Source: Mytilus californianus | Lineage: Eukaryota | NCBI RefSeq assembly: GCF_021869535.1 | Contig: NW_026262701.1 | Location: 43,400,001-43,464,000, forward strand | DNA length: 64,000 nt | Direction of reading: 5' to 3' | Notes under the pieces: model-generated | Databases searched by the model: none | What the model was told of the DNA's origin: nothing | Seen by the model: only the letters and a program-made list of their open reading frames with translations | Shown here: positions 839 through 18,300 of the stretch, piece by piece | Layout: each line of letters begins with the position of its first letter | Position numbering within the stretch: position 1 is the first letter of the stretch | Position numbers and translations under genes: made by a program

Positions 839-2275
839 TTACTGACGTTTTTTTCCTCTTTGTGTATATTTAAGATTTATTTCATGTAATAAATCTTGAT
901 CGAAACTTGAGTTAGGTTCCCAAGTTCGAGTTCCATCTTGCCATTTGACTCTCATAAGTCTTTGAACATTTCGAAAAACTCCTCTTTTAATTTGTTGAAA
1001 ACCAAATTTATCATTTCTATTTTGGTTACTATGATTATCTACTTCAGGTGGGTCATTGTTTGGTTCAATAGCTATTTGTTTAGTATCTTCATTTTCAACT
1101 TGATTGTCAATTTGAGGTGGTTGCAAATCATGCTCATTTTGATTTAAACCTTCATCATTTTTAATTTGATCTTGGGGATTGGTATATCTTTCACGGTGAA
1201 TATTTGGGTCATAATAACGCCTCATATTTGTTGCATTAATCAAAGATTTGTGTACAGTATTATTTTCAATGTGTTTAATCTTGTACGTATAGTTTGGATC
1301 AAGTTCAATGATGCGATAAGGACCGTTTGCTTTGTCGTGCAATTTGCGGGATAGACCTTTTGGGACTTTGTTATTTGTCAACAAAACTTGGTCACCAACA
1401 GAAAAATTTGGAATATTGAATTTAAGGTCATGCTTTTCCTTATATTTTGCTTTTTGTTGTTGGTCTCTTTCTTTAGCAATTGAATGAGCAATTTTTAAAT
1501 TTGCCAAAAATCCTGCTATATAGTCTTTGAGATCACGACTTAAATTGTCTTTTGGTTCTAAAGCTACATCAAAAGGAAGTCGCATTTCTTCCCCAAACAT
1601 CATGTAAAAGGGTGAGTATCCTATTGTGTTAAGGGATGGTGATTTTCTGTAATCCATCATTACAAAAGGGATGAGAGAAGGCCAATTCGATTGGTCCTTA
1701 TTGCAATACGTTCTGAGACAAGCTGCTAAAGTACTATTTTGGCGTTCTACTGTACCGTTAGTATTTGCGTGATAGGAACTTGAGTGGTGTTGTTTAACTT
1801 GAAACATTTCGTAAATTGCCTTTATGATCTTAGCCATAAACGACTGAGCATGGTCACTAAATAAAATCTTTGGGCTTCCAAACCTGGAGAAAACTTCAGA
1901 ACAAAGAATATTTGCAACTTCCTTAGCAGTTTGGGTTTTCATGGGGAAACCTTTAGTCCATCGAGTAAAAGAATCGACTACTAAGAGGATATGTTCATAG
2001 CCATCTTTAGTTTTAGACAAAGGCGCAAGAATATCAATGTGCCAACGATGAAATCTACCAACATGTGGCATTGGTGACAAAGGTGAATTGTTTGGATTGT
2101 AACTCCTTTTTGCACGTTGACACCTATCACAAGTTTTGATGTATTGTAACACGTCTGAATGCATTTTTGGCCAGTAATATTTTTCCAATAAAGAAGAATA
2201 AACTTTGTCTTCACCTAAGTGTCCTCCGCCTAAAAGAGAATCGTGGTAACTATGTAAAGCCTCCTCCTTAAACAA
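839..2275 (-). pseudogene. Ty3/Gypsy pol: integrase (HHCC zinc finger, DDE core, GPY/F) with C-terminal chromo-like domain
   Basis: YHDSLLGGGHLG...CDRC; WHID...VVDSFTRW...FSDH...NGTVERQN; ANGPYRI; tail RVKWQDGTRTWEP. Frameshifted relative to the RNase H ORF at about 2230-2275. Confidence 0.93.
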
Positions 2276-3363
2276 GTAGGTAAAGCAATTTGTTTTATAT
2301 GTCTAAGCTCATTAGGTAATCTTCTACACCTTCTTTGATACAAATGGTACAAAATACCGTTTGAAATGGAATAAAATTTAATTTCAGCAACTATAGCACG
2401 ATGTAACTTTTCATCTTGTGGAAGAGTGTTGTTTTGTAAATATGTGATAATGTTTGCTAAACCTGGACAAATTTGTTGTTTTTTAAAAAGCGAATCTGGA
2501 TTATATAAAGCTTGTGGTAGTTCTTCAATGTCTATGGCAGAAATTATTGGACAAAAATCAGTAGTCTCATCGTCATAAATAAACTCCGTGACGGTTCTCC
2601 AACCATCGGGTAGTTTATCAGATCCAAAAATAGAGGCACGATCTGTGTCAAGATCAGTATCGGACTCTAATCTGGAATCTGTTGTAGGATGTGCTGTTGA
2701 TACAGATTGTATAATTGGTGCCTCAATATATGGCCGACGACTTAAACAGTCTGCAACAACATTGCTTTTACCTGGACGATGGATTATATCATAATTCAAG
2801 TCTTGTAACTTCAGAGCCCATCTTTCAAGCCTACTAGATAACTTTGCAGATTTCAACCAAGTGAGTGCACTGTGATCTGTTACCACTGCGAAGTGAGAGT
2901 AAGTTAGATAAGGACGGTATGCTTCAACGCCTCTTAATATAGCCAAACACTCCTTCTCTGATGTATGGTAACTTTTCTCAGGGCCACTCAAAGCTTTACC
3001 ACCATAAGCTACTACATATTCTCTACCTTCATCATCCTTTTGCCCTAACACATAACCAATGGCCTTATCAGAAGCATCACAGGTTGAAATGAAAGACCTA
3101 TTTGGATCTGGATAGAATAGAACAGGGGCAGTAAGCAGAGCATTTTTCATAGTTTCAAAAGATTGTTGACACTGCGGTGTCCATTGGAATTGTGCTTCTT
3201 TACGCAACAAAGCTGTTAATGGTGAAACAATGTCAGAATGACCTTTGATGAAACGACGATAGTAGTTAGCCATGCCAAGAAAACTCCTAACCTGTTTGAC
3301 TGTTTTCGGAACCGGAAATTGACTAACATCATTAGTTTTTTTCTGGATCAACTTCAATACCAC
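2230..3363 (-). pseudogene. Ty3/Gypsy pol: RT connection plus RNase H
   Basis: VRSFLGMANYYRRFI, TCDASDKAIGYVL, VAYGGKAL, TSEKECLAI, VVTDHSAL, NVVADCLSRRP. Separated from the RT by a frameshift at about 3330-3360. Confidence 0.93.
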
Positions 3364-4423
3364 GCCGAGACATTACGTAACCTAGAAACTTCACTTCTTT
3401 TAAAGCAAAATTGGTTTTTGCAGGTTGCAATTTTAAGTTGGCTTCTTTTAACCTGGTAAAAACTTGACTCAAATGTTCTAAATGTTCCTCAAAAGAATTA
3501 CTGAAGATAAGGATATCATCAATGTATATCAGTAAGAATTTCCAATTTAGACCTCTAAAAACTTGAGTCATAAGACATTGAAAGGTGATAACTGCATTCA
3601 TCAGCCCGTAACTCATACGATTCCATTTGTAAACACCTGATTGGGAAATGAAAGCACTCTTATGTTTAGTTTCTTCGTCAAGAGGGATTTGCCAAAACGA
3701 ACTTTTTAAATCTAAATTTGTAAAATATTTCGCTTTAGCTTCACCGAGAGCATCAAAAACACTTTCAATATGAGGGAGAGGATAGCTCATAGGAACCGTT
3801 AATTTATTAAAAGAACGATAATCAATTGCCATCATCCAACCTCCTGTTTTCTTAGGAATCATGATTAATGGGGAACACCAATCAGAATTTGATTCTTCAA
3901 TAATTCCATTTTCTAATAATTCCTGAATTTGATGTTCAGTTTCACGCCTTACTTGAGGTGACTGCCTATGCGGATTACGCCTTACAGGCCGTGCACCTGG
4001 TACAGTTACAATTTTGTGTTTATACAAGGGAGTTTCTCCTAATTCTGTCATATCCGTAGCAAAACTTTGTTTATTTTCATTTAAAAACTTCTGCATCTTT
4101 TGTTTTTCAATATCTGTTAAATCAGATTCTGATAAATCAAACTTAAGATCTGAGCATGATTTGCTGTTAGGTGTTTTAATTGATGATACTGATGGGTCAG
4201 TTTCATTAAAATTTTGAATAGTTTCTGTATTGACATGAGCTACTTCAGCCAGTTTAGTACGTGCCTTAATCCTTACTTTTCTATCAGTCGGGTTTAGCAA
4301 GCTCAAATAAGCTTTACCGTGCTTGATTTTAACTAATGTTTTTGCTGCCAAAATTCTGTGCTTGTGAGCTAATGAATTTAGCGGTTCTAATAGCACTGTT
4401 TGATCATGTGTTTGGTGTGACAC
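3332..4423 (-). pseudogene. Ty3/Gypsy pol: reverse transcriptase plus upstream spacer
   Basis: SDWCSPLIMIPKK, MAIDYRSFN, FTNLDLKSSFWQI, MSYGLMNA, LIYIDDILIFS. Domain order PR-RT-RH-IN. Confidence 0.95.
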
Positions 4424-4640
4424 AGCAACACTAATTAAAGTTTGTGATCGTTTTGGAATCGTGATGGCTTTTCTTATTTTTGCTTAACCCTTTTTTAATG
4501 TTAACCGACTCAGCGTGACAACATCGTTATTCTCTAAAATTTCAAATGTGTCGTTTTCAAAATTTAACTTAGCTTTTGTTTGTTTCAAAAAATCTACGCC
4601 TAAAATTTAAGAATGGTGTAACTGTGCTATCATTTCTATA
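4424..4640 (-). pseudogene. C-terminal part of Gypsy aspartic protease with in-frame stops; element truncated upstream
   Basis: My translation, in frame with the RT ORF: QLHHS*ILGVDFLKQTKAKLNFENDTFEIL...KKG*AKIRK. ILGxDFL is the retropepsin C-terminal motif. No gag or 5' LTR is visible. Confidence 0.75.
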
Positions 4641-4729
4641 TGTAATTTTAAAAGTTAAATGCTATTTTTAAAATTAAATTGAAAATACTTTATCATTCAT
4701 GTATTATGCAAAACATTCAATGAAATATG

Positions 4730-5115
4730 ACTGAAGTTAGAGGACCAAATAATCTCCCTGGAAATGAGATATAATAATGCTATTACAACTGCATACCAAA
4801 TATCATTGGCATATTGGTAATGGTTTTAATTAAATTGACCTCATTACAAACTTTAATTGTAAGCGATACAAAAAGTTTGCGATCAATGAACTATCGTTCA
4901 GAGGACGAGGCCGTATAATCTACAACATTATGCCAATGCTAATACAAATTTATACAAAATATCCATTGAAAAGTCGTCAGCGGTCCCCCTTTAAAAAAGA
5001 CTTACCTTATCACAAATTAAAAAAAATGCTAACACCGCCGACGCCACCGAAAACAGCACGCCTCCATAACTACGTAGAGGCAAGGATTTGAATAGTCAGA
5101 TCCATGGTAGAGGCG
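4730..5115 (+). mobile_element. Degraded HINE/pearl-type element fragment
   Basis: CATACCAAATATCA core motif, ACCGCCGACGCCACCG microsatellite remnant, GGCGAGACAAA terminal hairpin remnant. Confidence 0.4.
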
Positions 5116-6086
5116 AGACAAACATTATCTATACTGACATTTTTTCGCCCTCTCATATTTTTTAAACTCTATATTTGGTGTAATATTATTGCAATTTTAT
5201 CGAAATATGCATGAACATTAAAAAGGCCTAGGTAAAAATGTGAAAAGTGAGAACAGAATTTGTAGTTGTTAACTAGGAATCGTTTTTATTCAATTACTTA
5301 AAGTAAGTTCTATTTTCCAGCAATCATCTATTTGACATGCCTAAAAACTCGTGTTTAGAATTATGATATTATCTAAACACATTTCTAAGAAAACACATTA
5401 CACGAACACATGTCTTGAATACAAACACTTTTTAGTGTGTTTTAGAATTAGAAGTTTGTAGGACTTTGAAACACTAAACTCTACACAATCCTACACACTT
5501 TCTTCAATCTAAACTACGAATAAACATGTTAAAAAAAGTGCGCAACCAATGTGTAAAAATGTATTTAGAATTGTGTTTAGGATTTAAACGTCATTTATAC
5601 AATGTACATATAGTAAGGATATCGATAATGCATTGTTGGACGTGGTCATATAGAAATGTAATAGATGTTATTTCGATGCCACCATTATTAACGAAAATTC
5701 GGGTCAGTCTATACAATATGGCTTTATTTTATTCTTCACATATAAAAAAATTTAACAAAAATTCCGAATTCCAAGGCAAATTCAATAAAAAACAGAATCC
5801 CGCGTTGCACATATTTTATCTATCCAAGGTACAAGGGCAATAACTATAAAAAAAAAAACACTTTTTTTTTGTCCTTTAAAACTTTTTATTAATATCTTAA
5901 AGAAATGAAGGCTTCAGAGTAAATGCAATATAATTTACATTATAATTAATGTTTCCAAGGGGCATAACTCGTTAAAAATATTTGATCAGCACTTATTTTC
6001 GAAAGTGTCAAAGACGTTGCTGATATAAACCTATGCTATAAGTTTCAAAAAATTCTAGCAATACTTGTACACATGAAAACGATGAC

Positions 6087-7643
6087 CAGACTTGGGGTCA
6101 ATTACATTGGAATGTAATTAATTGAATTACACATTACATTGCAAAAATGATCAATTACACTAATTACCGGTACACAGTTTTGGCAATGTAATTAATTAAA
6201 TTACAATTACTTTACCAAAGTAATTAATTAAATTACACATTACATTTTATCAGAATTGTATAAACCAATATGTTATGTACAATGTAAATATATATAACTT
6301 GTCTCAAATTTAGCCCAACAATGTTAAATCTTCTTCCCTCAGCTGAATTTGTTCTCTTGATTCTTTATATATATATATATCGCATGAGCCAAGGCTCCGT
6401 GTTGAAGACCGTACTTTGACCTATAATGGTTTACTTTTATAAATTGTGACTTGAATGGAAAGTTGTCTCATTGGCACTCATATCACATCTTATATCTATT
6501 GTAAGTTTATGTGACAATTTGGATGTAAAGTGTTTTCATTTACTTGATAACTGGTATTTTTTGTCAGCTATTGCCTATTGTCATTAAATTTTTAAACTTT
6601 TCAATTTTAACTATTGTCAACTAAATATATGTCAAAGGCAACAAACATCACTATGGCATCCGTTTTTTTTTTTTTTGCATTTGGTCAAATACCATTGAAT
6701 TTCTTTAATTAAGGTAGCCAACTTAGTTTGTTAACTTAATTTTATTCTCATTTTTAAAAAGAAGGATTTCTTTGTAATTTAATTAAAAAGTTTTATATAG
6801 ATAACAAATTTATTGTGTTCTTTAAAACTTTCAAAAGAAATATAGTTGTCATAACATTGAAAATGACTGAAGTATAATGCTTCATATATTTGTATACATC
6901 TGCTAATTAGATAAAATACATGTACTGTAAATTCAGAAAATATTGCGAGGCTTTTATTAATGCGAATAATGCGACTGTTTGAGTATCGCAATAATAAGAA
7001 CTCGCATTTTGATTTTTGATACATATATCTGTATGCAAATTTTCCTGAAATCGCAATAATTAATCTCGCATTTTTTGTCCATTCTCGAAAAATCGCAATA
7101 ATAAATGCACTCAATAATTTCTGAATTTACAGTAATATAAATAGTTTACATTGTCCCTAGGCTGTTTTACACACATATTAATCAGGCTTATTGCCATTTG
7201 TTTTTACAGCTGATAATTTTATTTCTATAAACTTATTGTGTATACTAATTTGACAAAATAAGTGTGTGCAAGGATTTAAAACATTTTTACCTTCATGTAA
7301 GTCACAAAGTCAAACTTCCATATATTTTAGAAGTACATTGATGGCAATTTGCTCTAAAAGTTTCATAAGGATTTGTTGGTTTCTCATTAATATATGTGAA
7401 TTAAATATTATTTTACAATTAATATTAACATAATCTCTTATGATTAACATCAAGAATTACATGCACATGTAATTGAAATGTAATTGAAAAGTAATTTAGC
7501 ATTACATGCTTTTTTCAATGTAATTAATTAAATTACCATTACATGTAATTTAAAAAATGCTCAATTACACATTACATCCAATTACATGGAAAATTGTAAT
7601 GCATTACACTTAATTACAATTACATTAAATTACCCCATCCCTG
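6087..7643. mobile_element. Non-autonomous hAT element with 8-bp TSD
   Basis: Perfect 8-bp TSD ACGATGAC (6079-6086 and 7644-7651). Termini CAGACTTGGGGTCAATT ... AATTACCCCATCCCTG. Many subterminal AATTAC motifs at both ends. Confidence 0.85.
6925..7132. mobile_element. Tc1/mariner-like MITE (TA TSD)
   Basis: TA|CTGTAAATTCAGAAA ... TTTCTGAATTTACAG|TA. A related copy lies at about 27338-27510. Confidence 0.8.
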
Positions 7644-8904: not shown

Positions 8905-9358
8905 TTGTTCAGTGTATGTTCAATGGTGTTAATACGTCCTTTGATTGAGTTAAGCTATTTCAGTTGATATTTTATAGTGTGTCTTTCTATGTTGTGATGT
9001 TACACTATTGTTTCAGAAAAAGGGTGAAGGTTTGGTACCATTAAAACGTTTAAACCCGCTGCATTTGTTTGCACCTGTCCTAAGTCAGGAATCTGATGTT
9101 CAGTAGTTGTCGTTTGTTGATGTGGTTCATAAGTGTTTCTCGTTTCTCGTTTTTTATATAGATTAGACCGTTGGTTTTTCCCGTTTGAATGGTTTTACAC
9201 TAGTAATTTTTGGGGCCCTTTATAGCTTACTGTTCGGTGTGAGCCAAGGCTCCGTGTTGAAGACCGTACTGTGACCTATAATGGTTTACTTTTATAAAAT
9301 TTGACTTGGATGGATAGTTGTCTCATTGGCACTCATACCACATCTTCTTATATCTATT
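8905..9358 (+). repeat. High-copy interspersed repeat of about 460 bp (mussel-type)
   Basis: Near-identical copies at 23795-24255 (-) and 55615-56080 (+). Fragments or relatives at 6385-6500, 15768-16100, 23645-23700, 27020-27090, 42190-42255, 49682-49870, 54570-54630 and 54975-55148. Ends GTTGTCTCATTGGCACTCATACCACATCTTCTTATAT. Confidence 0.85.
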
Positions 9359-10494
9359 AACAGTTCATATGTCTATAAAGAAATTTTACATTGTTGCTCG
9401 TTAAACTGGTCTATTTCACATTTTCCCCTTTTAAAATAACCTTGAAAGGCTGATAATAATCGATTTCACTCTCTTTTGATTAATGGTAATACAGAAAACT
9501 CTTCTGTTTGTCGCGTGAATTAATTTCGGACTGACCTTATTTATATATTTTAATATTATTTCTTTTTTTATTGCAAAAACTTTTTTTCCTCGTGGACTGT
9601 CTGCATAGTTACAATTTCATATTAGAAAACATCGCGACTTCCACATAAGAAACTGTTTTCTCGATTCGCACTTTCCATAGACTGAGGTATGTCTTTTTCA
9701 TTCTAGTTATAATATACTCAAGTTATCATTAAGAAAAACATAAATTTTTGATATCTCATAATTTATATAAATGATATTCCAAAAACGTTTGTTGAATTGA
9801 GGATCTTTTTAACATATGTTATTATTTGTAGGAAGGGTTATGGGGTTTGTATGTTTCATACATTTTTATCATCCGATTATAAGGGGGAAATAAACTTACT
9901 TGCTGACTGGTTGATTTTTTAATCTCTTCTTGAAACCCGCTAATTTTAAGTGATTTATACTTCTTTTCTAATGTTAAAAAGTCGCTTCCTCATAGCTCAT
10001 ATCAAAAATTAGTAAGAATATTATATTTATATAGTTGATTTTTGCTCTAAACCTAAATGATATTCCACAACATTTTTTTTCAAGAATACCTGAATATTAA
10101 ACTTTTGTATGTCCTCATAATATAAAATATGGTATTTAATTTGATTTAATGTTGATGAAAATCTTAAAATTTTGGACAAGGTTGTCGCATACACTATACA
10201 AATAAGGAGATGTGATATTATTGAAATTGAGGCAACTATTCACCAGAAGGAACAGGACGAGGATGTAGAGTACTATAGATCAATGTTTGGCTTTCAAAAA
10301 TCAGCACACCTCATACCGTTTCGAAATCAATAAAAGGTCCAAGCTTCCTTAAATGTAAAACAATTCAAAAGATAAAGCAAACGAGGAAATTTAAGCATAA
10401 AGTTATACATAAATTATGTTCATTGAAATCTAAAACGCGACTTCTGACTTGGGCATAGCGAACAAATTGTAAAATTTAAACACCGTATGAAGAG

Positions 10495-10930
10495 GCCAAA
10501 GGAATATCACTATCCAAAAAGATAAAAATTAACAATAGGGAACAACAAAGCATCTATGTTGTCGTTATTTCTTGTATATAGTTTCCCGTGTGAAACTGAA
10601 ATAACTTAATCTATAAAAGAACAATTATTGCTGTCTGCATCAGATATATTTAAAGAATGTAACCGTGGGTAAATTTCTGCAATAAAATTAGAACATTCTA
10701 GATTATTTAAAGCAAATATATCATTAAGGTAACTGTAAGTATTTTTAAAATGTAATTAAGACAGATCTTTACTCAGTTTGGTCATAAACTGTGATCTATA
10801 ACAATACAGAGGCAAGTTTGCTATTACAGGAGTGTAATTGGTATCCATAGGAATTTCTGCGACCTCAATAAACTTCATTGCCAAAATGAACATAAATGTT
10901 GTCGAGGGGAAATTTACAGCTTAAATCATC
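10495..10930 (-). mobile_element. Degenerate Penelope-like element RT fragment
   Basis: Translates to EIPMDTNYTPVIANLPLY...YSYLNDIFALNN...EIYP; homologous to the 16.9-17.3 kb copy. Confidence 0.7.
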
Positions 10931-11474
10931 GTATCACAGTTCCTGTAAGTTTATCTAATTCATGAAATTATGTCCAATAGGCCATGTTTATCAAGACTTA
11001 AGTCCTTAAGTAAGTCATAATATCGGTATTGAAACAAAATGTAAAATAAAACATCACCTTCGTTTATTTCAGTACTTCGAAATAGATACACACATTAAAC
11101 AATATTTTATTGGGTGTAATATCTTGCCATTGATTTTCTTGTTTGATTGTTAAAAGAATCAACTGAACAATTTAAAGATTGTTTTTCAAATATACACCAA
11201 CAGAGTTCATACTGCTTACAAATTGAACATTTTCAAGAGAAGTTGAAACGATTTGTTATTTCACAACGCCTCCTCCTTATAAGCGAAATGAAGAAGGATG
11301 TAATCAAAACCAGGAAATTATTCGGTATTTTTTTAAAACCAGATATAGAATTCACGAATGAGGGGGAATAGAGATCAACCTGAATACTATTCCAGTTGTC
11401 AAAACAGATGATTCACTGTTACTGCATATATCCGTGTAATCCAAAGACAATAGTTAGTGTTTATCAAATACAAA

Positions 11475-11538
11475 ATGGTGTTCATTTACATTTTCATAAT
11501 TCTTAGTGTTGATTTTGTTCATGTGATACTTGCAATTG
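11475..11538 (+). CDS. Receptor gene exon 1: signal peptide MVFIYIFIILSVDFVHVILAI
   Basis: AAAATGG start context, hydrophobic 21-mer, phase-1 donor G|GTGAGT that joins in frame to the FN3 exon (G+AT = Asp). Confidence 0.7.
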
Positions 11539-11671
11539 GTGAGTAAATTTTCAAGTATACATAATGTTTATTGACGTCGAATAAGCAAATTGATGACTAT
11601 ACATACATGTAAGACTTCAGAATATAATTGTCTGGAGAATTTCAAAACATATCTTCAAAAAAGAGGAACCA

Positions 11672-13958
11672 ACCAGACTCAAGCTGGCAGCCACTTTTAG
11701 CAGCCAATCAAGATAGCAGCCACTTTTTTCCAGCAGCCAATTTTGATGATATGTCTAAAAATTAAAAAACTGTATAAGACTCAAACGTTCCAAAAATCTC
11801 AAAATATTAGTTAAATATAATTTGACAGCGGAGTCCAACATTTTTACGGCTTGTCGTGATTCTAAAAAGATGACAGTCCGATTTAAATACCAATGGTGAC
11901 TGCAGGAACTTTTTTTCGGAGGACACTGTTTGTTTAATATAAAAAAAATGTACAATTTAAAATCGTGTTTTTCTTTCTTTTTCTCGTTTTTTTTATTCCT
12001 TATGACTAGGAGGTACAGAAACAATGTATGAATAGAAAATGAAAAAAAAACCAAAGTACAACTGCCATTGTTAACAATGGATTTAAGTAAGTTGTGAGGA
12101 ATCTTGTTATATATATATTTCCTTGAACTGAATAAAAAAGATGCAATGTACGACAGAAAAATTACATACATAATTTCCATACACTCGGCATCCTCAAAAA
12201 TCGAGTATTTCAGTTGAAACCATTTTCAATATCTATTGCTGTATATATGAAATGAAAACATTTCGATATACATGTAATGTTAATCTTTTTTTTAATGTGA
12301 ACAAGTATTTTCTATAAAAATACTACATGGACTAATTTGTACGGCATGCGAAATTACTGATAACTGAAATTTTACTTGTCAAATGTGCCAGTACAAATAA
12401 TTGATATATAACTAAATCTGTGGTAGCCAGACGGGACCGGATCCCAGAAAAATATTTAAGTGGCGAATAGTCTGAGTCAACACCTTTAAAATGAGCTAGG
12501 TCTGGTTTGGAACTTTGCAGTAGGGCCTTACCGAGGAGTACCGAAAGAATGTGTAGTTGATATAAAAAGTATGTTAAGGGGCAACTTTTAACCCCTGTGG
12601 TGGCCAGACGGGCCTGGATCCCAGAAAAATATTTAAGTGGTGAAAAGCCTTGGTCAATACCTTTGAAATGAGCTAGATCTGGTTCGGAACTTTGCCGTAG
12701 GGACTTGCCGAGGAGTACCGAATGAATGTGTAGTTGATGTGAAAAGTACGTTAAGGGGCAACTTTGAACCCCCGTGGTGGCCAGACGGGCCTGGATACCA
12801 GAAAAATATCTAAGAGAAGAATAGCCTGGGTCAACACCTTTTTCTGGGATCTGGGCCCGTCTGGGCACCACAGGGGTTCACAGTTGCCCCTTAACGTACT
12901 TTTCATATCAACTACACATTCTTTCGGTACTCCTCGGCAAGTCCCAACGGCAAAGTTCCCAACCAGACCTAGCTCATTTCAAAGGTGTTGACCGAGGCTA
13001 TTCGCCACTGAAATATTTTTTTGGGATCCGGGCACGTTTGGACATTGCAGGGGTTCAAAGTTGGCCCTTAACGTATTTTCCATACCAACCACACATTCGG
13101 TACTCTTCGGCATATCCCTACGGCAAAGTTCCGAACTAGACCTAGCTCATTCCAAAGGTGTTGACTGAGACTATTCGCCACTTAAATATTGTTCTGGGAT
13201 CATGGCCCGTCTGAACACCACAGATTTAGTTATATGTCAATTATTTGTACTGGCACATTTTACAAGGAAAATTTCAGTTAAATTAACATATTGGTAATTT
13301 CGCATGCCATACAAAATAGTCCACGTAGGATTTTTATAGAAAATACTTGTTCACATTAAAAGACAGATTCACATTACATGTATATCGAAATGTTTCTATT
13401 TCATATATACAGAAATAGATATTAAAAATGGTTTGAACTGAAATACTGGATATTTGAGGATGCTGAGTGTATGGAAAGCCTGTATGTAGTTTTTTCTGTC
13501 GTACAGTGCATCTTTTTTTATTCAGTTCAATGGAAATATATATAACACGATTCCTCACAACTTACCTAAATCAATTATTAACCATGATGGTAGTTGCACT
13601 TTGATTTTTTTTATTTTCTATTCCTACATTGTTTCTGTACCTCCTAATCAAAAGGAATTAAAAAACGAGAAAAAGAACGAAAAACGATTTTAAATAGTCC
13701 TCCAAAAATAAAAGGGCTGCTAGCATCATTGGTATATAAAACGGATTGTCATCTTTTGAGAATCACGACAAGACGTGAAATGTCGAATTCCGCTGTCAAA
13801 GGAGGTGCGTTTATATTTAACTAAGATTTTGAGATTTTTGGAACGTTTGAGTCTTATACAGTTTTTGGTTTTTAGAAATATCATTAAAATTGGTTGCTGG
13901 AAAAAAGTGGCTGCTATCTTGATTGGCTGCTAAAAGTGGCTGCCAGCTTGAGTCTGGT
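11672..13958. mobile_element. Foldback-like element: 2.3-kb palindrome with arms of about 1.15 kb and inner 177-bp tandem arrays
   Basis: ACCAGACTCAAGCTGGCAGCCAC ... GTGGCTGCCAGCTTGAGTCTGGT. Inverted homology runs inward to the junction at about 12840. CCAGACGGG recurs at 12427, 12604 and 12781 and is mirrored on the right arm. Confidence 0.9.
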
Positions 13959-14419
13959 CAATATAATACATGGTATAGTTAGTTGTCTTTATGATTAAAA
14001 CTCAATACAACGGATTTTTCCGTCAGGTCTGCTGTCAGACATATGATGCATTAATTTTGATCAACAACGGCTAATGCAAATTAAGTATTTGCTATAACTA
14101 AAATTTAAGAAGAAGCATGCATGGATACATGACAAGTGTATTTCATTCAAAATTTAACTAAACCTATTGCAAATCTAAAACTAGTTTGTAAGGTCTCAAT
14201 CATGATACCAACGATATACGGCTTCTGTTTTTTTTCTTGGTAAGAATGAGTTTAAGTTTCAACACATTCGTGATTCAAATTAATACAATTTACATAACTT
14301 TCTACACACGCTTCTTAATACAACGCAAAGTAAACAGAATAGTAAATACACAATTACGTATTTAATATAGATATAAAAATACCGTAATAGTTTGATACGT
14401 TTGGAGGAAATGTTTTTAA

Positions 14420-14532
14420 ACAATCACTAGGCATTCACATGGGAACCAACTGTGCTCCTCTTCTTGCCGACTTGTTCCTTTATTCATATGAGGCTGACTT
14501 CACACAGGAACTTCTTAGGAAGAAAGAAAGAT
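14420..14532 (+). mobile_element. Penelope-like RT fragment (second subfamily)
   Basis: GIHMGTNCAPLLADLFLYSYEADFTQELLRKKE. Confidence 0.8.
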
Positions 14533-14729
14533 TTGGTCTCATAGTCAATGAAATGTTTGCCACTGGACGTTAAGAAACTAACACTCAATCAATCAATATG
14601 ATTGTCAAAGAGACAAATTTCCACTTAGGATCACATCACATAGGATTTAGCAACTCTAGGTCACAGTACACCCTTCAACAAACATCATAACACAGCAAAT
14701 TATAAGGGCCAATCAAATTTCAAACGTCT

Positions 14730-14905
14730 ATTTACCTTAGCAAAACTTTTCGGAATTTTTTTTATCCTTAGTGCTCTTCAACTTTGTACTTTATTTGGCT
14801 TTCTATCTATTTTTTATGTGTCGAGCGTGACTGATGAGTCTTTTGTAGATGAAACGGGTGTATGGTGTGCAAAGTTTTAGCCTGATGTTCTTTATGATTA
14901 TTTTG
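14730..14905 (+). repeat. Retrozyme/PLE pLTR-like repeat carrying a degenerate type I hammerhead ribozyme
   Basis: CTGATGA (14831-37) GTCT-TTTGT-AGAT GAAA (14851-54) C-GGGT-G TA, then TGGTGT as the putative stem I partner of upstream GCGTGA. Confidence 0.65.
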
Positions 14906-15227
14906 CAATTAAATAGAAAAAAAAATTCTATAACATTGTGTGATCATGCGGAAAATTTACATTATCAAAAATTGATATTAGAGTCAATTAGTGTAGGAAA
15001 CCGGTATATTTAATTCTTTGAACAGATAAGAGACTGATTTATTATTAAAAAACAGCAAACCTTATACATGATTTCACGTTTCAGAATAGCGTAAATGGGG
15101 ATCATCGCAAGACTATTTATTTCAAAGCGCATATCAATAGACATTAAAACAATATATTTTCAAATTTCTCGAGTGTCTCATCTGGATAAATAAACAGACT
15201 GTTTCAGAATCTTTCATTCATTTTCAG

Positions 15228-15524
15228 ATAAATCAGATCCACCGAAAGATGTCCGAGTAGACGTAATTGGTAATACAACTAACATTTCATGGATAATTCC
15301 TACTAACCAAGGGATAACTTGGTCTCGGATTTATCTCTACAATTCAAAGGAAGGCGGTGTGGATTTAGATTTAGAAAACGAACGTTATCATACAGATTTA
15401 AGATATCCAACTTCTAGTTTTGAGATTGCCTATTTAAAGATGTGTCATGAATATAATGTCAAAATTTATTTCTTACATAAATTTCAAAATTCAGAAGTCA
15501 CCACACGAACGTTTCGGATAATAC
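15228..15524 (+). CDS. Receptor gene exon: fibronectin type III domain
   Basis: TTTTCAG| ... |GTGAGT, 297 bp, phase 1-1, no stops: KSDPPKDVRVDVIGNTTNISWIIPTNQGITWSRIYLY...TSSFEIAYLKMCHEYNVKIYF...TRTFRII. FN3 Pro/Trp/Leu/Tyr pattern. Confidence 0.82.
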
Positions 15525-16129
15525 GTGAGTTGATTTTTTTCTTAAGAATTTCATAACTTGGCATTGCACAAGGTCATGTATTGAGATGATGCATTATTTT
15601 TATTTTAAATTATCAGATTTTTGCCAACAATTCTTTGATAGTTTCTGCGTGTATTAATAATACTTGGAATATTTATAATCTACAGTGGAATCGTACAATA
15701 TATGGTTGTAAGACTAAATTGTGATCCTATTGAAATGTTTAGATTCGTACTAAATCATACTATAAAAATAAGAAGATGTGGTATGATTGTCAATGAAACA
15801 AATGACATAGAATAAAACAACTATAGGTCACCGTAAGGCCTTCAACAATGAGCAAAAGCCCATACCGCATAGTCAGCTATAAATCGCACTGAAATGACAA
15901 ATGTAAAACAATTCAAAAGAGAAAACTAACGCCTGATTTATGTAAAAAACAATGAACGAAAAACAAATCTTATATGCAGCAACAAAACGACAACCAGTGA
16001 ATTACAGGCTCCTGACTTGGAACGGGCACATACAGAATGTGGCGGTGGTAAAACGAGTTTGCTGGCGCCAAACCCTTCCCTTACCAGGGACAGTTGTGTA
16101 AAAGTACAAAATAAGAACAAACTATATAA

Positions 16130-18300
16130 ATCGGCGGAAAAGAACTTAGTCCATCAGATTGATACAAAGATGAAAAACAAGTAACAAAAACATAGACCGG
16201 ACGTGGCAGGGTATTTATACATCCCAATAACAATAAAGATACTAAGAACAGATCTGAGAGTACTCGCAGTTACTGACAACTAGTTCAAAGCCAATAACAA
16301 CTTATAAAAACATAATTCATCTAAGACTAAAATACCAATCATTTAACATCCAACATCAGGTGAATTTAGTGTAAAGCCGTCATAAACAGTCAGAGAAAAC
16401 ATGACCTTGTGCAATGCCAAGATACAGATTTCGACAGGTTGTAGAACCGTGAATGTGCATATGTATATTACAATAATTTTTAGCTTGGTTTTAATTTACT
16501 AATATAAAAAAATCAATATTAAATCCAATAAAAACAATATTGAAAGATCTATTACACTGTTGAATTGGTAACCTTTTTGAATAAGTTTTTTAAAGGATCG
16601 ATAAGTTTACCCGAATCGTATCTTAATTTCCGGGATTGGTAAACACATCTCCGTAAAATAAGGATGTGTTATCCCGTTTGTTAGAAATTTCTACAGGTAC
16701 AGCCAAACTGTCAAACCAAATATGTGTATCTATAAAAGAACTTAGTAAAAGTTTTAGGTAATTTGTGTTAACGAAATCCCCGACTTAATAATTCACCAGT
16801 TATACATAGATAAAGTTAATTGAAATCGAAAACATCACTACAGACACGGACATAGCGAACGAGTTGTGATATATAAATACCGTAAGATGGTGCCATAGGA
16901 ACATCACCGCCCAAAAAAGGAAAATTAACAATAGGGAACTAAAAATCTTACCTTTTGTCGTAACTTTTTGTGAAGAGTTTCACGTGTAAAACTGAAATGT
17001 CTAGGAAAGGACATTTGTTACCGTTTATATTTGATTTATTCAATGTAAGTTCCTTCGGGTAAATTTCGATATTAAATTCAGAAAATACGTGATTATTTAA
17101 CGAAAAAATATCATCAAGTAAACGGTATGTGGTGTTGGATTTATCAATTAAATGCAATTAAGACGGGTCTTTACTGAGTTTGGCCAGAAACAAGTCTGCT
17201 ATTAAAGGAGCGCCATTGGTGCCCATAGGAATACCAACAACCTATCGATAAACTGTATTGCCGAAACGTACATTAATGTTGTCAAAGCGAAAATTTAACA
17301 GCTTCAATCATTTCATCACACCTCCAGTATTTACCTTTCTCATATATAGAAGAAGGCTTTAAATGAGTTGAGCAAATATATCTGTAATCAGATTGTTCAA
17401 ACGAAAATTTAATTAAAAACTAATGTTTGATAAGATGGTGCTACATTTGTAAAGTGGAGCATTAAGAATTGAAAGGTAAAAACTGTCATTAGAAGCAAAT
17501 AACCACCCAATGCACGTAATTTATTTATTTAATTTAATGTTCAGAAAAGGCCGTAAGCTGTGATGTGGTTATTCTATGATTGTTTACTATATGACTCTTT
17601 GTTGAGCGCACGGACCTGAACGTAGAAGAATTGATAATGCTATTCCTAAAAACGTCCGTGTAGTATTTACGTCATAGTACCACCACATTGTTGGCTGTTT
17701 TGTCAGTCGGTATAAGCATAAACTGCATTGCACATGTTTCCAGTACTTAAAGTGTGTTTCTCATTCTAGTAGGCGTATTATGGTCTCTTTAATTTATTTC
17801 TAAATTATTTTCAAAATGTAATATTCGAATATCCACAACATTCAAACATTTATTTAAATAAGAATCAAGAGATTTTTGTATCAGATTTTTCTTATTTACA
17901 CCAATTTTTACAATACGATGAAAGAGCCTCTTTTATGATTTGACAACACTGTTTCCAATCTATTTTAGATGATGAACGATATTTTGGTCCTTTTTTCAAC
18001 AGTTTTTGACCCCTTGGTCTTGAACGATATTGAGGTCCCCTGTAATAACATGCATGGCCATAGGGATCATGTCTAAAATTCGACGATTCGTAGTCTCAAA
18101 TTATTTTCTACACTGACGTCTGATGTTACTGACATAGAATTAAAGATTAAACGTCTGCCGATGTTTTTTGTATGTATACGAATGAATAGGTGGTTCTGTG
18201 TAATCAATACAGGGAGGTATATTTTTATCAGATTTTTCCCGTTTATATCAATTTTTACAATACGATGAAAAGGCGTCCTTTATAGAATAAAAGAATAACA
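16130..18300 (-). mobile_element. Degenerate Penelope-like retroelement (RT region plus 3' tail)
   Basis: GPQYR, TFQFLMLHFTN (cf. TFDFSTLYT), GIPMGTNGAPLIADLFLA, YRLLDDIFSLNN, PFLDIS, FPIVNFPFLGGDVPMAPSYGIYISQL. Many stops and frameshifts. Confidence 0.85.

What the first reader, a model, noticed from the sequence alone, without database searches (positions are those of the whole stretch)
11672..13958. 2.3-kb nearly spacer-less palindrome: a foldback-type element
Seen: two inverted arms (about 1170 and 1120 bp) meet head-on at about 12840. Each has terminal GCAGCCA sub-repeats, an AT-rich outer domain of about 750 bp and an inner GC-richer 177-bp tandem array. The arms differ by scattered substitutions and a deletion near 13700. 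Established: this outer-domain/inner-tandem layout resembles Drosophila FB and sea-urchin TU foldback elements. The ACCAGACT terminus and the lack of a clear TSD (at most CA/CA) did not let me assign a superfamily, so it may be an undescribed family.
Basis: partly seen in the sequence, partly recalled or inferred. Interest (0 to 1): 0.72.

Follow-up and report, generated by a model that had tools for sequence, protein, structure and literature searches.

The report
Old foldback transposon copy in mussel
This 2.3-kb hairpin-shaped stretch is a real but old, gene-less copy of a "foldback" jumping gene whose arms carry a 177-bp repeat. It belongs to a family of several hundred copies that this scan has already met elsewhere in the same genome, so it is a tidy example of a known kind and not a new one.

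Summary
Window 11672-13958 is a 2,287-bp near-perfect palindrome. Each arm has a tip with GCAGCCA sub-repeats, an AT-rich outer domain of about 746 bp and an inner array of 177-bp monomers. The arms are 90% alike and enclose a 32-nt loop. It is not an assembly artefact: a contig from an independent sample crosses the centre, and three other samples cover both flank junctions.

It is one old copy of a dispersed family: at least 227 termini match the 40-nt tip, against 0 in the control. It is exact in 13 of 18 complete copies and off by one letter or a 1-nt shift in 3 more. This copy and one other lack it.

A younger subfamily (tip ACTAG...) forms 10-18-kb elements with perfect 9-bp duplications and arrays of up to 73 monomers. 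Termini paired up to 76 kb apart suggest larger ones.

I found no transposase inside any copy. I infer a Mutator-type enzyme acting in trans from the 9-bp duplication alone. The closest known analogue is Tetris of Drosophila virilis.

The scan had already noted this family on other DNA (s1-337777, s1-287930). I call it a new member of a known kind, of modest interest.

The parts
11672..11771 (+). Left terminus. The tip is ACCAGACTCAAGCT, followed by four GCAGCCA sub-repeats arranged as a 29-nt unit repeated twice. These are probably transposase-binding sites (inferred).
   Evidence: D5, D10, I7: 97 nt, 95% complementary to 13862-13958. The 40-nt tip is conserved genome-wide: 116+111 matches with up to 2 mismatches, control 0. 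The first 150 nt are the best-conserved part across 24 arms (majority fraction 0.93-0.95).
11672..12417 (+). Left outer (flanking) domain: 746 bp, AT-rich, non-coding.
   Evidence: 52 scored genomic matches at 80-87% identity out of 533 candidates. GC 0.26-0.34; no credible ORF.
12418..12806 (+). Left inner array of 177-bp monomers (two full units plus the paired start of a third).
   Evidence: The monomer is 65-67% identical, with conserved blocks, to the 178-bp monomer of the young subfamily.
12807..12838 (.). Central unpaired loop of 32 nt. It derives from the monomer (monomer positions about 36-70) and is the point where the two arms meet.
   Evidence: (I1: 32 nt between the arms). An independent contig (X4 record 23, 12766-12911, depth 6, 1 mismatch) bridges it.
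12839..13223 (-). Right inner array of monomers in inverted orientation (2.2 units).
13224..13958 (-). Right outer domain and terminus, with a 29-nt deletion at about 13698 and a 10-nt insertion at about 13810 relative to the left arm. It ends in the reverse complement of the tip.
   Evidence: Flank junction contigs: X1 record 6, X3 record 16, X4 record 24, X5 record 32.

Best explanation
Window 11672-13958 is an old, no longer mobile, non-autonomous copy of a foldback-type class II (TIR) DNA transposon. The whole element consists of two long terminal inverted repeats. Each has a conserved tip with GCAGCCA sub-repeats, a 746-bp flanking domain and an inner array of 177-bp monomers. There is no middle domain and no gene. 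Family members move by cut-and-paste: a transposase supplied in trans binds the tips and sub-terminal repeats, and integration at a 9-bp staggered cut leaves a 9-bp target-site duplication. The enzyme is most likely of the Mutator (MULE/Foldback-Phantom) superfamily. Shown here: the architecture, the copy number, the 9-bp TSD in the family, the existence of young large relatives, and the reality of the locus in several individuals. Inferred: the cut-and-paste mechanism, the role of the sub-repeats as binding sites, and the superfamily. This copy's arms have diverged by 10%, about as much as unrelated copies differ, and its TSD is gone. That loss is probably due to a flanking deletion or recombination after insertion.
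For: Architecture at the stated coordinates. Multi-copy family: 533 candidates and 52 scored hits at 80-87% identity; 227 termini matching the 40-nt tip with up to 2 mismatches, against 0 for the reversed control. The layout outer domain / + monomers / - monomers / outer domain recurs in at least 10 other loci with variable monomer numbers and different centre breakpoints. The 9-bp TSD is exact in 13 of 18 complete elements and is 8/9, or 9/9 after a 1-nt boundary shift, in 3 more; 9-mers taken 20 nt further out match at 1-4 of 9 in 17 of 18 cases. Young relatives of 10.2-17.8 kb have identical 40-nt tips, arms 96-100% alike and perfect TSDs. An independent contig bridges the centre, and both flank junctions are present in 3-4 samples from 2 studies. 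A 9-bp TSD is the size typical of MULE transposases, and foldback elements such as Tm1 and Tetris are assigned to Mutator on that basis (PMC3169594, PMC4079207).
Against: No transposase was found in any of the roughly 20 copies inspected. None of 150 MULE-domain hits or 48 IS1595/Merlin-like hits lies inside any of about 60 mapped terminus pairs. [quoted passage not shown] The window copy itself has no TSD (2/9), so its own insertion by transposition is inferred from its relatives. Only short-read contigs were available, not long reads.
Confidence: 0.85

Rival explanations
1. It is a foldback-type transposon as above, but it is mobilised by a transposase of another superfamily (Merlin, which makes 8-9 bp TSDs, or P, hAT or an unknown one) and not by a Mutator-like enzyme.
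For: No MULE domain lies inside any mapped pair of termini. Foldback architecture evolved independently in several superfamilies (PMC3169594). Merlin also makes 8-9 bp TSDs (my own knowledge).
Against: The TSD is strictly 9 bp in 13 of 13 exact cases, whereas P/Galileo make 7-8 bp and hAT 8 bp. No IS1595/Merlin-like hit lies inside a pair either. Merlin is rare in bivalves in a published survey (PMC10294476).
Confidence: 0.2
2. It is an assembly artefact: a fold-back chimeric read or a collapsed inverted join.
For: Near spacer-less palindromes are a classic product of chimeric long reads. I could not lay long reads.
Against: The arms differ by 10% and by several indels. A 146-bp contig from a different sample and study crosses the centre at single-copy depth with 1 mismatch. 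Both element/flank junctions are present in X3, X4 and X5. At least 10 other loci have the same design.
Confidence: 0.02
3. It is a local, non-mobile inverted duplication of a short satellite array and its flank, or two independent half-elements that landed head to head.
For: This copy has no TSD. Its arms are no more alike than arms of different copies (0.90 against a family mean of 0.89).
Against: Complete palindromic copies with the same tips are bounded by 9-bp TSDs at many unrelated sites. Two separate insertions ending exactly head to head inside the monomer array would be a coincidence. The equal divergence is what an old burst would give.
Confidence: 0.06
4. It is a pearl/MgE/DTC84-type, Helentron-related, tandem-repeat-carrying element, the kind usually reported in bivalves.
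For: Bivalve genomes are rich in non-autonomous elements with central arrays of 160-180-bp monomers (PMC7492417, PMC3879986).
Against: In the oyster Helentron-derived elements the array always has a single orientation relative to its flanks, and Helitron-type elements make no TSD (PMC7492417). Here the arrays are inverted, the TIRs are about 1.1 kb long and the TSD is 9 bp.
Confidence: 0.02

Closest known systems
Tetris (and its derivative DAIBAM), foldback transposon of Drosophila virilis (PMC4079207)
   Same: Its long TIRs are built of an external unique flanking domain (up to 866 bp) followed by a variable number of about 220-bp tandem repeats. Its TSDs are 8-10 bp. It has no ORF and no autonomous copy was found. 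It was assigned to Mutator from TSD size. Its tandem repeats act as satellite building blocks.
   Different: There is no evidence of sequence relatedness, and it comes from a different phylum. Tetris has an inner domain and a middle domain, whereas this copy has only a 32-nt loop. In Tetris the repeat shares 37 bp with the flanking domain; I found no such similarity here. Tetris has 3 complete copies, whereas this family has hundreds of termini, and confirmed elements reach 18 kb (paired termini suggest up to 76 kb).
Drosophila melanogaster Foldback (FB) elements
   Same: Long inverted arms make up nearly the whole element. The arms have internal tandem repeats, the TSD is 9 bp, most copies are non-coding, and arm lengths vary. 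(The FB details are from my own knowledge.)
   Different: FB arms are built of short repeats (10-31 bp) from close to the tip, with no 746-bp unique outer domain followed by 177-bp monomers. Relatedness of the transposases is untested.
Tm1, Mutator/Foldback family of root-knot nematodes (PMC3169594)
   Same: It has composite foldback-like TIRs with tandem motifs, mostly 9-bp TSDs without a target consensus, mostly non-autonomous copies, and TIRs of one element about 93% alike.
   Different: Tm1 has a member that encodes a Phantom-type MULE transposase; no such member was found here. Tm1 repeats are 14 bp long and its elements are 1-2.6 kb.
Galileo (P superfamily) of Drosophila
   Same: It has foldback-like long TIRs with internal tandem repeats, and these carry extra transposase-binding sites.
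   Different: Its TSD is 7-8 bp (my own knowledge) and it encodes a P-type transposase. The 9-bp TSD here does not fit.
Sea-urchin TU elements
   Different: I did not test this.

Membership tests
Foldback-type transposable elements (structural class) | Long terminal inverted repeats that make up most or all of the element | tested here: met
   The arms are 1,167 and 1,120 nt of a 2,287-nt element, 90.2% alike, with a 32-nt loop.
Foldback-type transposable elements (structural class) | Arms with a modular structure that includes tandem repeats of variable number | tested here: met
   177-bp monomers, 2.2-2.4 per arm here, and from 0.5 to more than 8 per arm in the old-subfamily copies examined. 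Young relatives carry up to 73 in one arm.
Foldback-type transposable elements (structural class) | Dispersed multi-copy family bounded by target-site duplications | tested here: met
   227 termini. The 9-bp TSD is exact in 13 of 18 elements. The window copy itself has no TSD.
Mutator / MULE superfamily (including Foldback-Phantom) | TSD of 9 bp (range 8-11) | tested here: met
.
Mutator / MULE superfamily (including Foldback-Phantom) | An autonomous member with the same termini that encodes a MULE DDE transposase | tested here: inconclusive
   No DDE ORF was found in the copies inspected. None of 150 PF10551 hits lies inside the mapped pairs.
P superfamily (Galileo-like foldback elements) | 7-8 bp TSD and a P/THAP9-type transposase | tested here: not met
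   The TSD is 9 bp. I did not search for the transposase.
hAT superfamily | 8-bp TSD | tested here: not met
   The TSD is 9 bp in all 13 exact cases.
Merlin superfamily | 8-9 bp TSD and an IS1595/IS1016-like transposase | tested here: inconclusive
   The TSD length is compatible. None of 48 PF12762 hits lies inside the mapped pairs.
Pearl / MgE / DTC84 / Helentron-derived repeat-carrying elements of bivalves | A central array in a single orientation, no long TIRs and no TSD | tested here: not met
   Here the arrays are inverted, the TIRs are 1.1 kb and the TSD is 9 bp. The description of those families comes from PMC7492417.

The most novel reading that the evidence does not exclude
The window copy is a fossil of a lineage of satellite-carrying foldback transposons that has been active recently. 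This family and at least two sister families share only the 14-nt tip ACCAGACTCAAGCT. They form TSD-bounded elements confirmed up to 18 kb, and paired termini suggest up to about 76 kb. Together they appear to hold nearly all of the genome's 178-bp satellite. On this reading, transposition of giant foldback elements, perhaps driven by a giant Mutator transposase noted elsewhere in this scan, is the main way this satellite spreads and seeds new arrays in a mollusc genome.
Probability: 0.3. Interest if true: 0.55.

Novelty: new member of a known kind. Interest (0 to 1): 0.3.

Why it matters
The window copy is an ordinary fossil. The family is useful in three ways.

- It gives a clean, high-copy animal example outside insects and nematodes of a foldback transposon that carries its own satellite. 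Young copies are 10-18 kb with perfect 9-bp duplications and arrays of up to 73 monomers.
- The best 178-bp satellite arrays in the genome lie inside or next to family termini (12 of 14 scored regions). The system could therefore show directly how transposition disperses satellite DNA.
- Long near-perfect palindromes are also hot spots for rearrangement and possible sources of hairpin small RNAs, which matters for the very polymorphic mussel genomes.

For annotation, the 9-bp duplication and the conserved tip let the several hundred copies be masked and classified.

Tried and rejected
- **Transposase inside copies.** ORF scans of a 9.1-kb old copy (L031) and of six young elements found only repeat-derived frames and BEL/Pao gag or protease fragments (DUF1759, Peptidase_A17). 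These are nested or captured retroelement pieces, not a DDE enzyme.
- **Genome-wide domain searches.** I cross-checked MULE (150 hits), IS1595/Merlin-like (48) and OTU (64) domain hits against about 60 mapped terminus pairs. None lies inside a pair.
- **A candidate MULE.** A 9.2-kb MULE with 1.1-kb TIRs and a 1,715-aa ORF (L047/L048) has different termini (GGCGCCTGCAAAC...), so I rejected it as the partner.
- **TSD exchange by inversion or translocation**, as an explanation for the missing TSD. The exact flank-plus-tip match at C165:317202 belongs to a sister family with other sub-repeats and unrelated flanks. The other matches are at chance level.
- **Arm homogenisation.** In old copies the two arms of one element are no more alike than arms of different elements (0.88-0.94 against about 0.89), so there is no sign of gene conversion.
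- **Tetris-like origin of the monomer** from the outer domain. I found no similarity.
- **Rfam.** No hit in 9000-17000.
- **Metagenome scan for the tip.** It found nothing.
- **More genome DNA.** TSDs of the 20-76-kb pairs were therefore not checked, and I did not try to read them any other way.
- **Repbase and Dfam** are not available here.

Full report
OBSERVATION. The feature is real and lies at the stated coordinates. The repeat finder and TRF show two inverted arms, 11672-12838 and 12839-13958. Each arm has three parts:
- a tip ACCAGACTCAAGCT followed by GCAGCCA sub-repeats (four in the left arm; three plus one mutated in the right);
- an AT-rich outer domain of 746 bp (GC 0.26-0.34);
- an inner array of 177-bp monomers (2.4 and 2.2 copies; GC 0.41-0.52).

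A global alignment of the arms gives 1,091 aligned positions at 90.2% identity. The right arm has a 29-nt deletion at about 13698 and a 10-nt insertion at about 13810. A 32-nt unpaired centre lies at 12807-12838. As single-stranded DNA the centre folds into one long hairpin at -385 kcal/mol, against -103 +/- 7 for shuffles. No credible ORF or Rfam family lies in or next to it.

NOT AN ARTEFACT. I laid contigs of four public runs (four samples, two studies) on 10900-14700.
- One contig from a sample other than the best holder (X4 record 23, 146 bp, depth 6, 1 mismatch) covers 12766-12911. It bridges the centre with more than 70 nt on each side, at the single-copy depth of that run.
- The left junction is crossed by X3 record 9, X4 record 18 and X5 record 27.
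- The right junction is crossed by X1 record 6, X3 record 16, X4 record 24 and X5 record 32.
- No joint that would correspond to an empty site was listed.

Only contigs were available, not long reads. Together with the 10% arm divergence, this excludes a fold-back assembly error.

A DISPERSED FAMILY WITH A 9-BP TSD. The outer domain has 533 candidate matches in the 1.65-Gb genome, and 52 scored matches are 80-87% identical. The 40-nt tip occurs 116+111 times with up to 2 mismatches, against 0 for the reversed control. Word depth over the tips is several hundred times the flank depth in all four runs (this is rough and is not a copy number).

Mapping the outer domain and the monomer onto 30 fetched loci shows the same design in at least 10 other places: outer domain, + monomers, - monomers, inverted outer domain. 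Monomer numbers and centre breakpoints differ between copies.

Among 18 complete elements, the 9-mers that abut the tips are identical in 13. They are 8/9, or 9/9 after a 1-nt boundary shift, in 3 more. The window copy and one other have none. Control 9-mers 20 nt further out match at 1-4 of 9 positions in 17 of 18 cases. The 16 TSDs show no consensus beyond the AT-richness of the genome.

AGE OF THIS COPY. In a 24-arm alignment the mean pairwise identity is 0.892, and the two window arms are 0.901 alike. In the old subfamily (tip ACCAG) the two arms of one element are 0.88-0.94 alike over the first 240 nt, which is the same as arms of different elements. The window copy is therefore a fossil of an old burst whose arms have since drifted independently. 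There is no sign of arm homogenisation. The tips are somewhat better conserved than the interior (majority fraction 0.93-0.95 against 0.87-0.93).

The missing TSD (GAGGAACCA against CAATATAAT) is far beyond what decay would give. I tested for an exchange of TSDs with another copy through inversion or translocation. That produced only a chance-level set of matches and one exact 9-mer-plus-tip match that belongs to a different family with unrelated flanks. A flanking deletion or an unresolved rearrangement remains the likely cause. This is inference.

YOUNG, LARGE RELATIVES. A second subfamily has the tip ACTAGACTCAAGCT.... Its exact 40-mer occurs 49+53 times. The termini fall into 36 neighbouring +/- pairs 2.0-76 kb apart, plus one pair 158 kb apart. 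I fetched seven of them.
- All seven have perfect 9-bp TSDs. Six are independent, because two share flanks and so are a segmental duplication.
- They are 3.4-17.8 kb long and their arms are 96-100% alike.
- They share the first 245 bp or so of the outer domain, followed by arrays of a 178-bp monomer.
- E5 has 73 monomers one way and 5 the other. E7 has 41.8 monomers that are 99% alike.
- The 178-bp monomer is 65-67% identical to the window's 177-bp monomer, in conserved blocks. The array is therefore an ancestral part of the element.
- Three of the elements share a 5-8-kb centre with BEL/Pao gag fragments (DUF1759). This centre moved with them but encodes no DDE enzyme.

A genome search with four young monomers placed 12 of the 14 scored regions inside or next to family termini.

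SISTER FAMILIES. The 14-nt tip followed by a base other than G occurs 224+218 times, against 2+0 for the control. These termini are again paired 1.6-60 kb apart. Two copies I read have other sub-terminal repeats (AGCGAACAAT and AGCGACCAATT) and tandem repeats of their own (166-bp monomers in L046; monomer-like repeats at roughly 178-bp spacing in L045). Conserved tips combined with family-specific sub-terminal repeats are what one expects of related transposases with diverged binding sites. This is inference.

THE ENZYME. I found no transposase.
- The copies inspected are non-coding apart from nested retroelement pieces.
- None of 150 MULE, 48 IS1595/Merlin-like or 64 OTU domain hits lies inside any of about 60 mapped pairs.
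- A 9.2-kb MULE with 1.1-kb TIRs (L047/L048) has unrelated tips.
- Earlier notes of this scan describe a 49-kb OTU-fused Mutator with satellite arms in this genome (s1-282001, s1-282002). Its coordinates are not given in the notes. The three equal-scoring OTU-exon hits that I guess may belong to that family are not flanked by exact tips of this family in my lists, so I could not confirm any link.

The Mutator assignment rests only on the strict 9-bp TSD. That is the same argument used for Tetris and is consistent with Tm1. I put it at about 0.6. Foldback architecture is polyphyletic.

COMPARISON AND NOVELTY. The closest known analogue is Tetris of D. virilis. It has a flanking domain, about 220-bp tandem repeats, 8-10-bp TSDs and no ORF, and no autonomous copy was found (PMC4079207). 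Classic FB and Tm1 share the class and the 9-bp TSD. Galileo (P superfamily), hAT and the Helentron-like pearl/MgE/DTC84 elements of bivalves fail on TSD or architecture.

No paper in the searchable library describes foldback elements in mussels. MULEs are reported in all molluscs (PMC10294476). Repbase and Dfam could not be queried.

The organism is not disclosed. Earlier notes call it a Mytilus mussel and I did not verify that.

This scan had already reported the same family on other DNA. s1-337777 appears to be my E4 (a 13.1-kb element with 178-bp arms), and s1-287930 is an old small member 41 Mb downstream.

My verdict is that this is a confirmed observation of an old copy of a foldback transposon family. 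It is a new member of a known kind and of modest interest. The family's recent, large, satellite-laden members are the part worth following.

Noticed in passing
window 14329-14582: This short stretch has extreme word depth in all four runs, roughly 8,000 times the single-copy flank. It reads as a reverse-transcriptase-like fragment (...GIHMGTNCAPLLADLFLYSYE...), so it is probably a piece of a very abundant retroelement.
   Followed up: no
L043+L044 (G000:C24:20845190-20862992); array hits at G000:C154:30711776-30719751: E7 is a 17.8-kb young foldback element with 41.8 monomers that are 99% alike. The pair on C154 (17.9 kb) carries 100% identical monomers. This is either a very recent transposition or a segmental duplication.
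   Followed up: partly
L033 2255-9035; L037 5450-10530; L043/L044 8480-16200: Three young elements at different sites share a 5-8-kb centre. It holds two convergent BEL/Pao gag-protease-like fragments (DUF1759, E = 1e-39). Retroelement DNA was evidently captured and then moved as cargo of the foldback element.
   Followed up: partly
L047+L048 (G000:C24:20821283-20830450); second copy L049+L050: This is a 9.2-kb Mutator-like element with about 1.1-kb TIRs. A single 1,715-aa open frame combines GDSL-lipase-like, NADAR, MULE and Ulp1-protease-like domains. The two copies are 98-99% alike. Its tips are unrelated to the foldback family.
   Followed up: partly
L046 1256-4343 (G000:C1:30270255-30273342); L045 about 2058-6716 (G000:C165): These are sister foldback families that share only the 14-nt tip ACCAGACTCAAGCT. 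Their sub-terminal repeats are AGCGAACAAT and AGCGACCAATT, and they carry tandem repeats of their own (166-bp monomers in L046). They contribute 442 termini genome-wide.
   Followed up: partly
L035 and L036 (G000:C24:25997784-26002974 and 21711081-21714495): The same young element with the same flanks and the same TSD (ATGTATTAC) occurs twice, 4.3 Mb apart, so this is a segmental duplication. One copy has an extra insertion of about 1.8 kb in its right arm.
   Followed up: no
L031 1813-8398 (G000:C154:100469739-100478874): This old-subfamily copy has arms 95-100% alike and a perfect TSD (CTCTGATAG). A 6.6-kb non-coding insert splits its monomer array. Its arms are much less diverged than those of other copies with the ACCAG tip.
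   Followed up: partly
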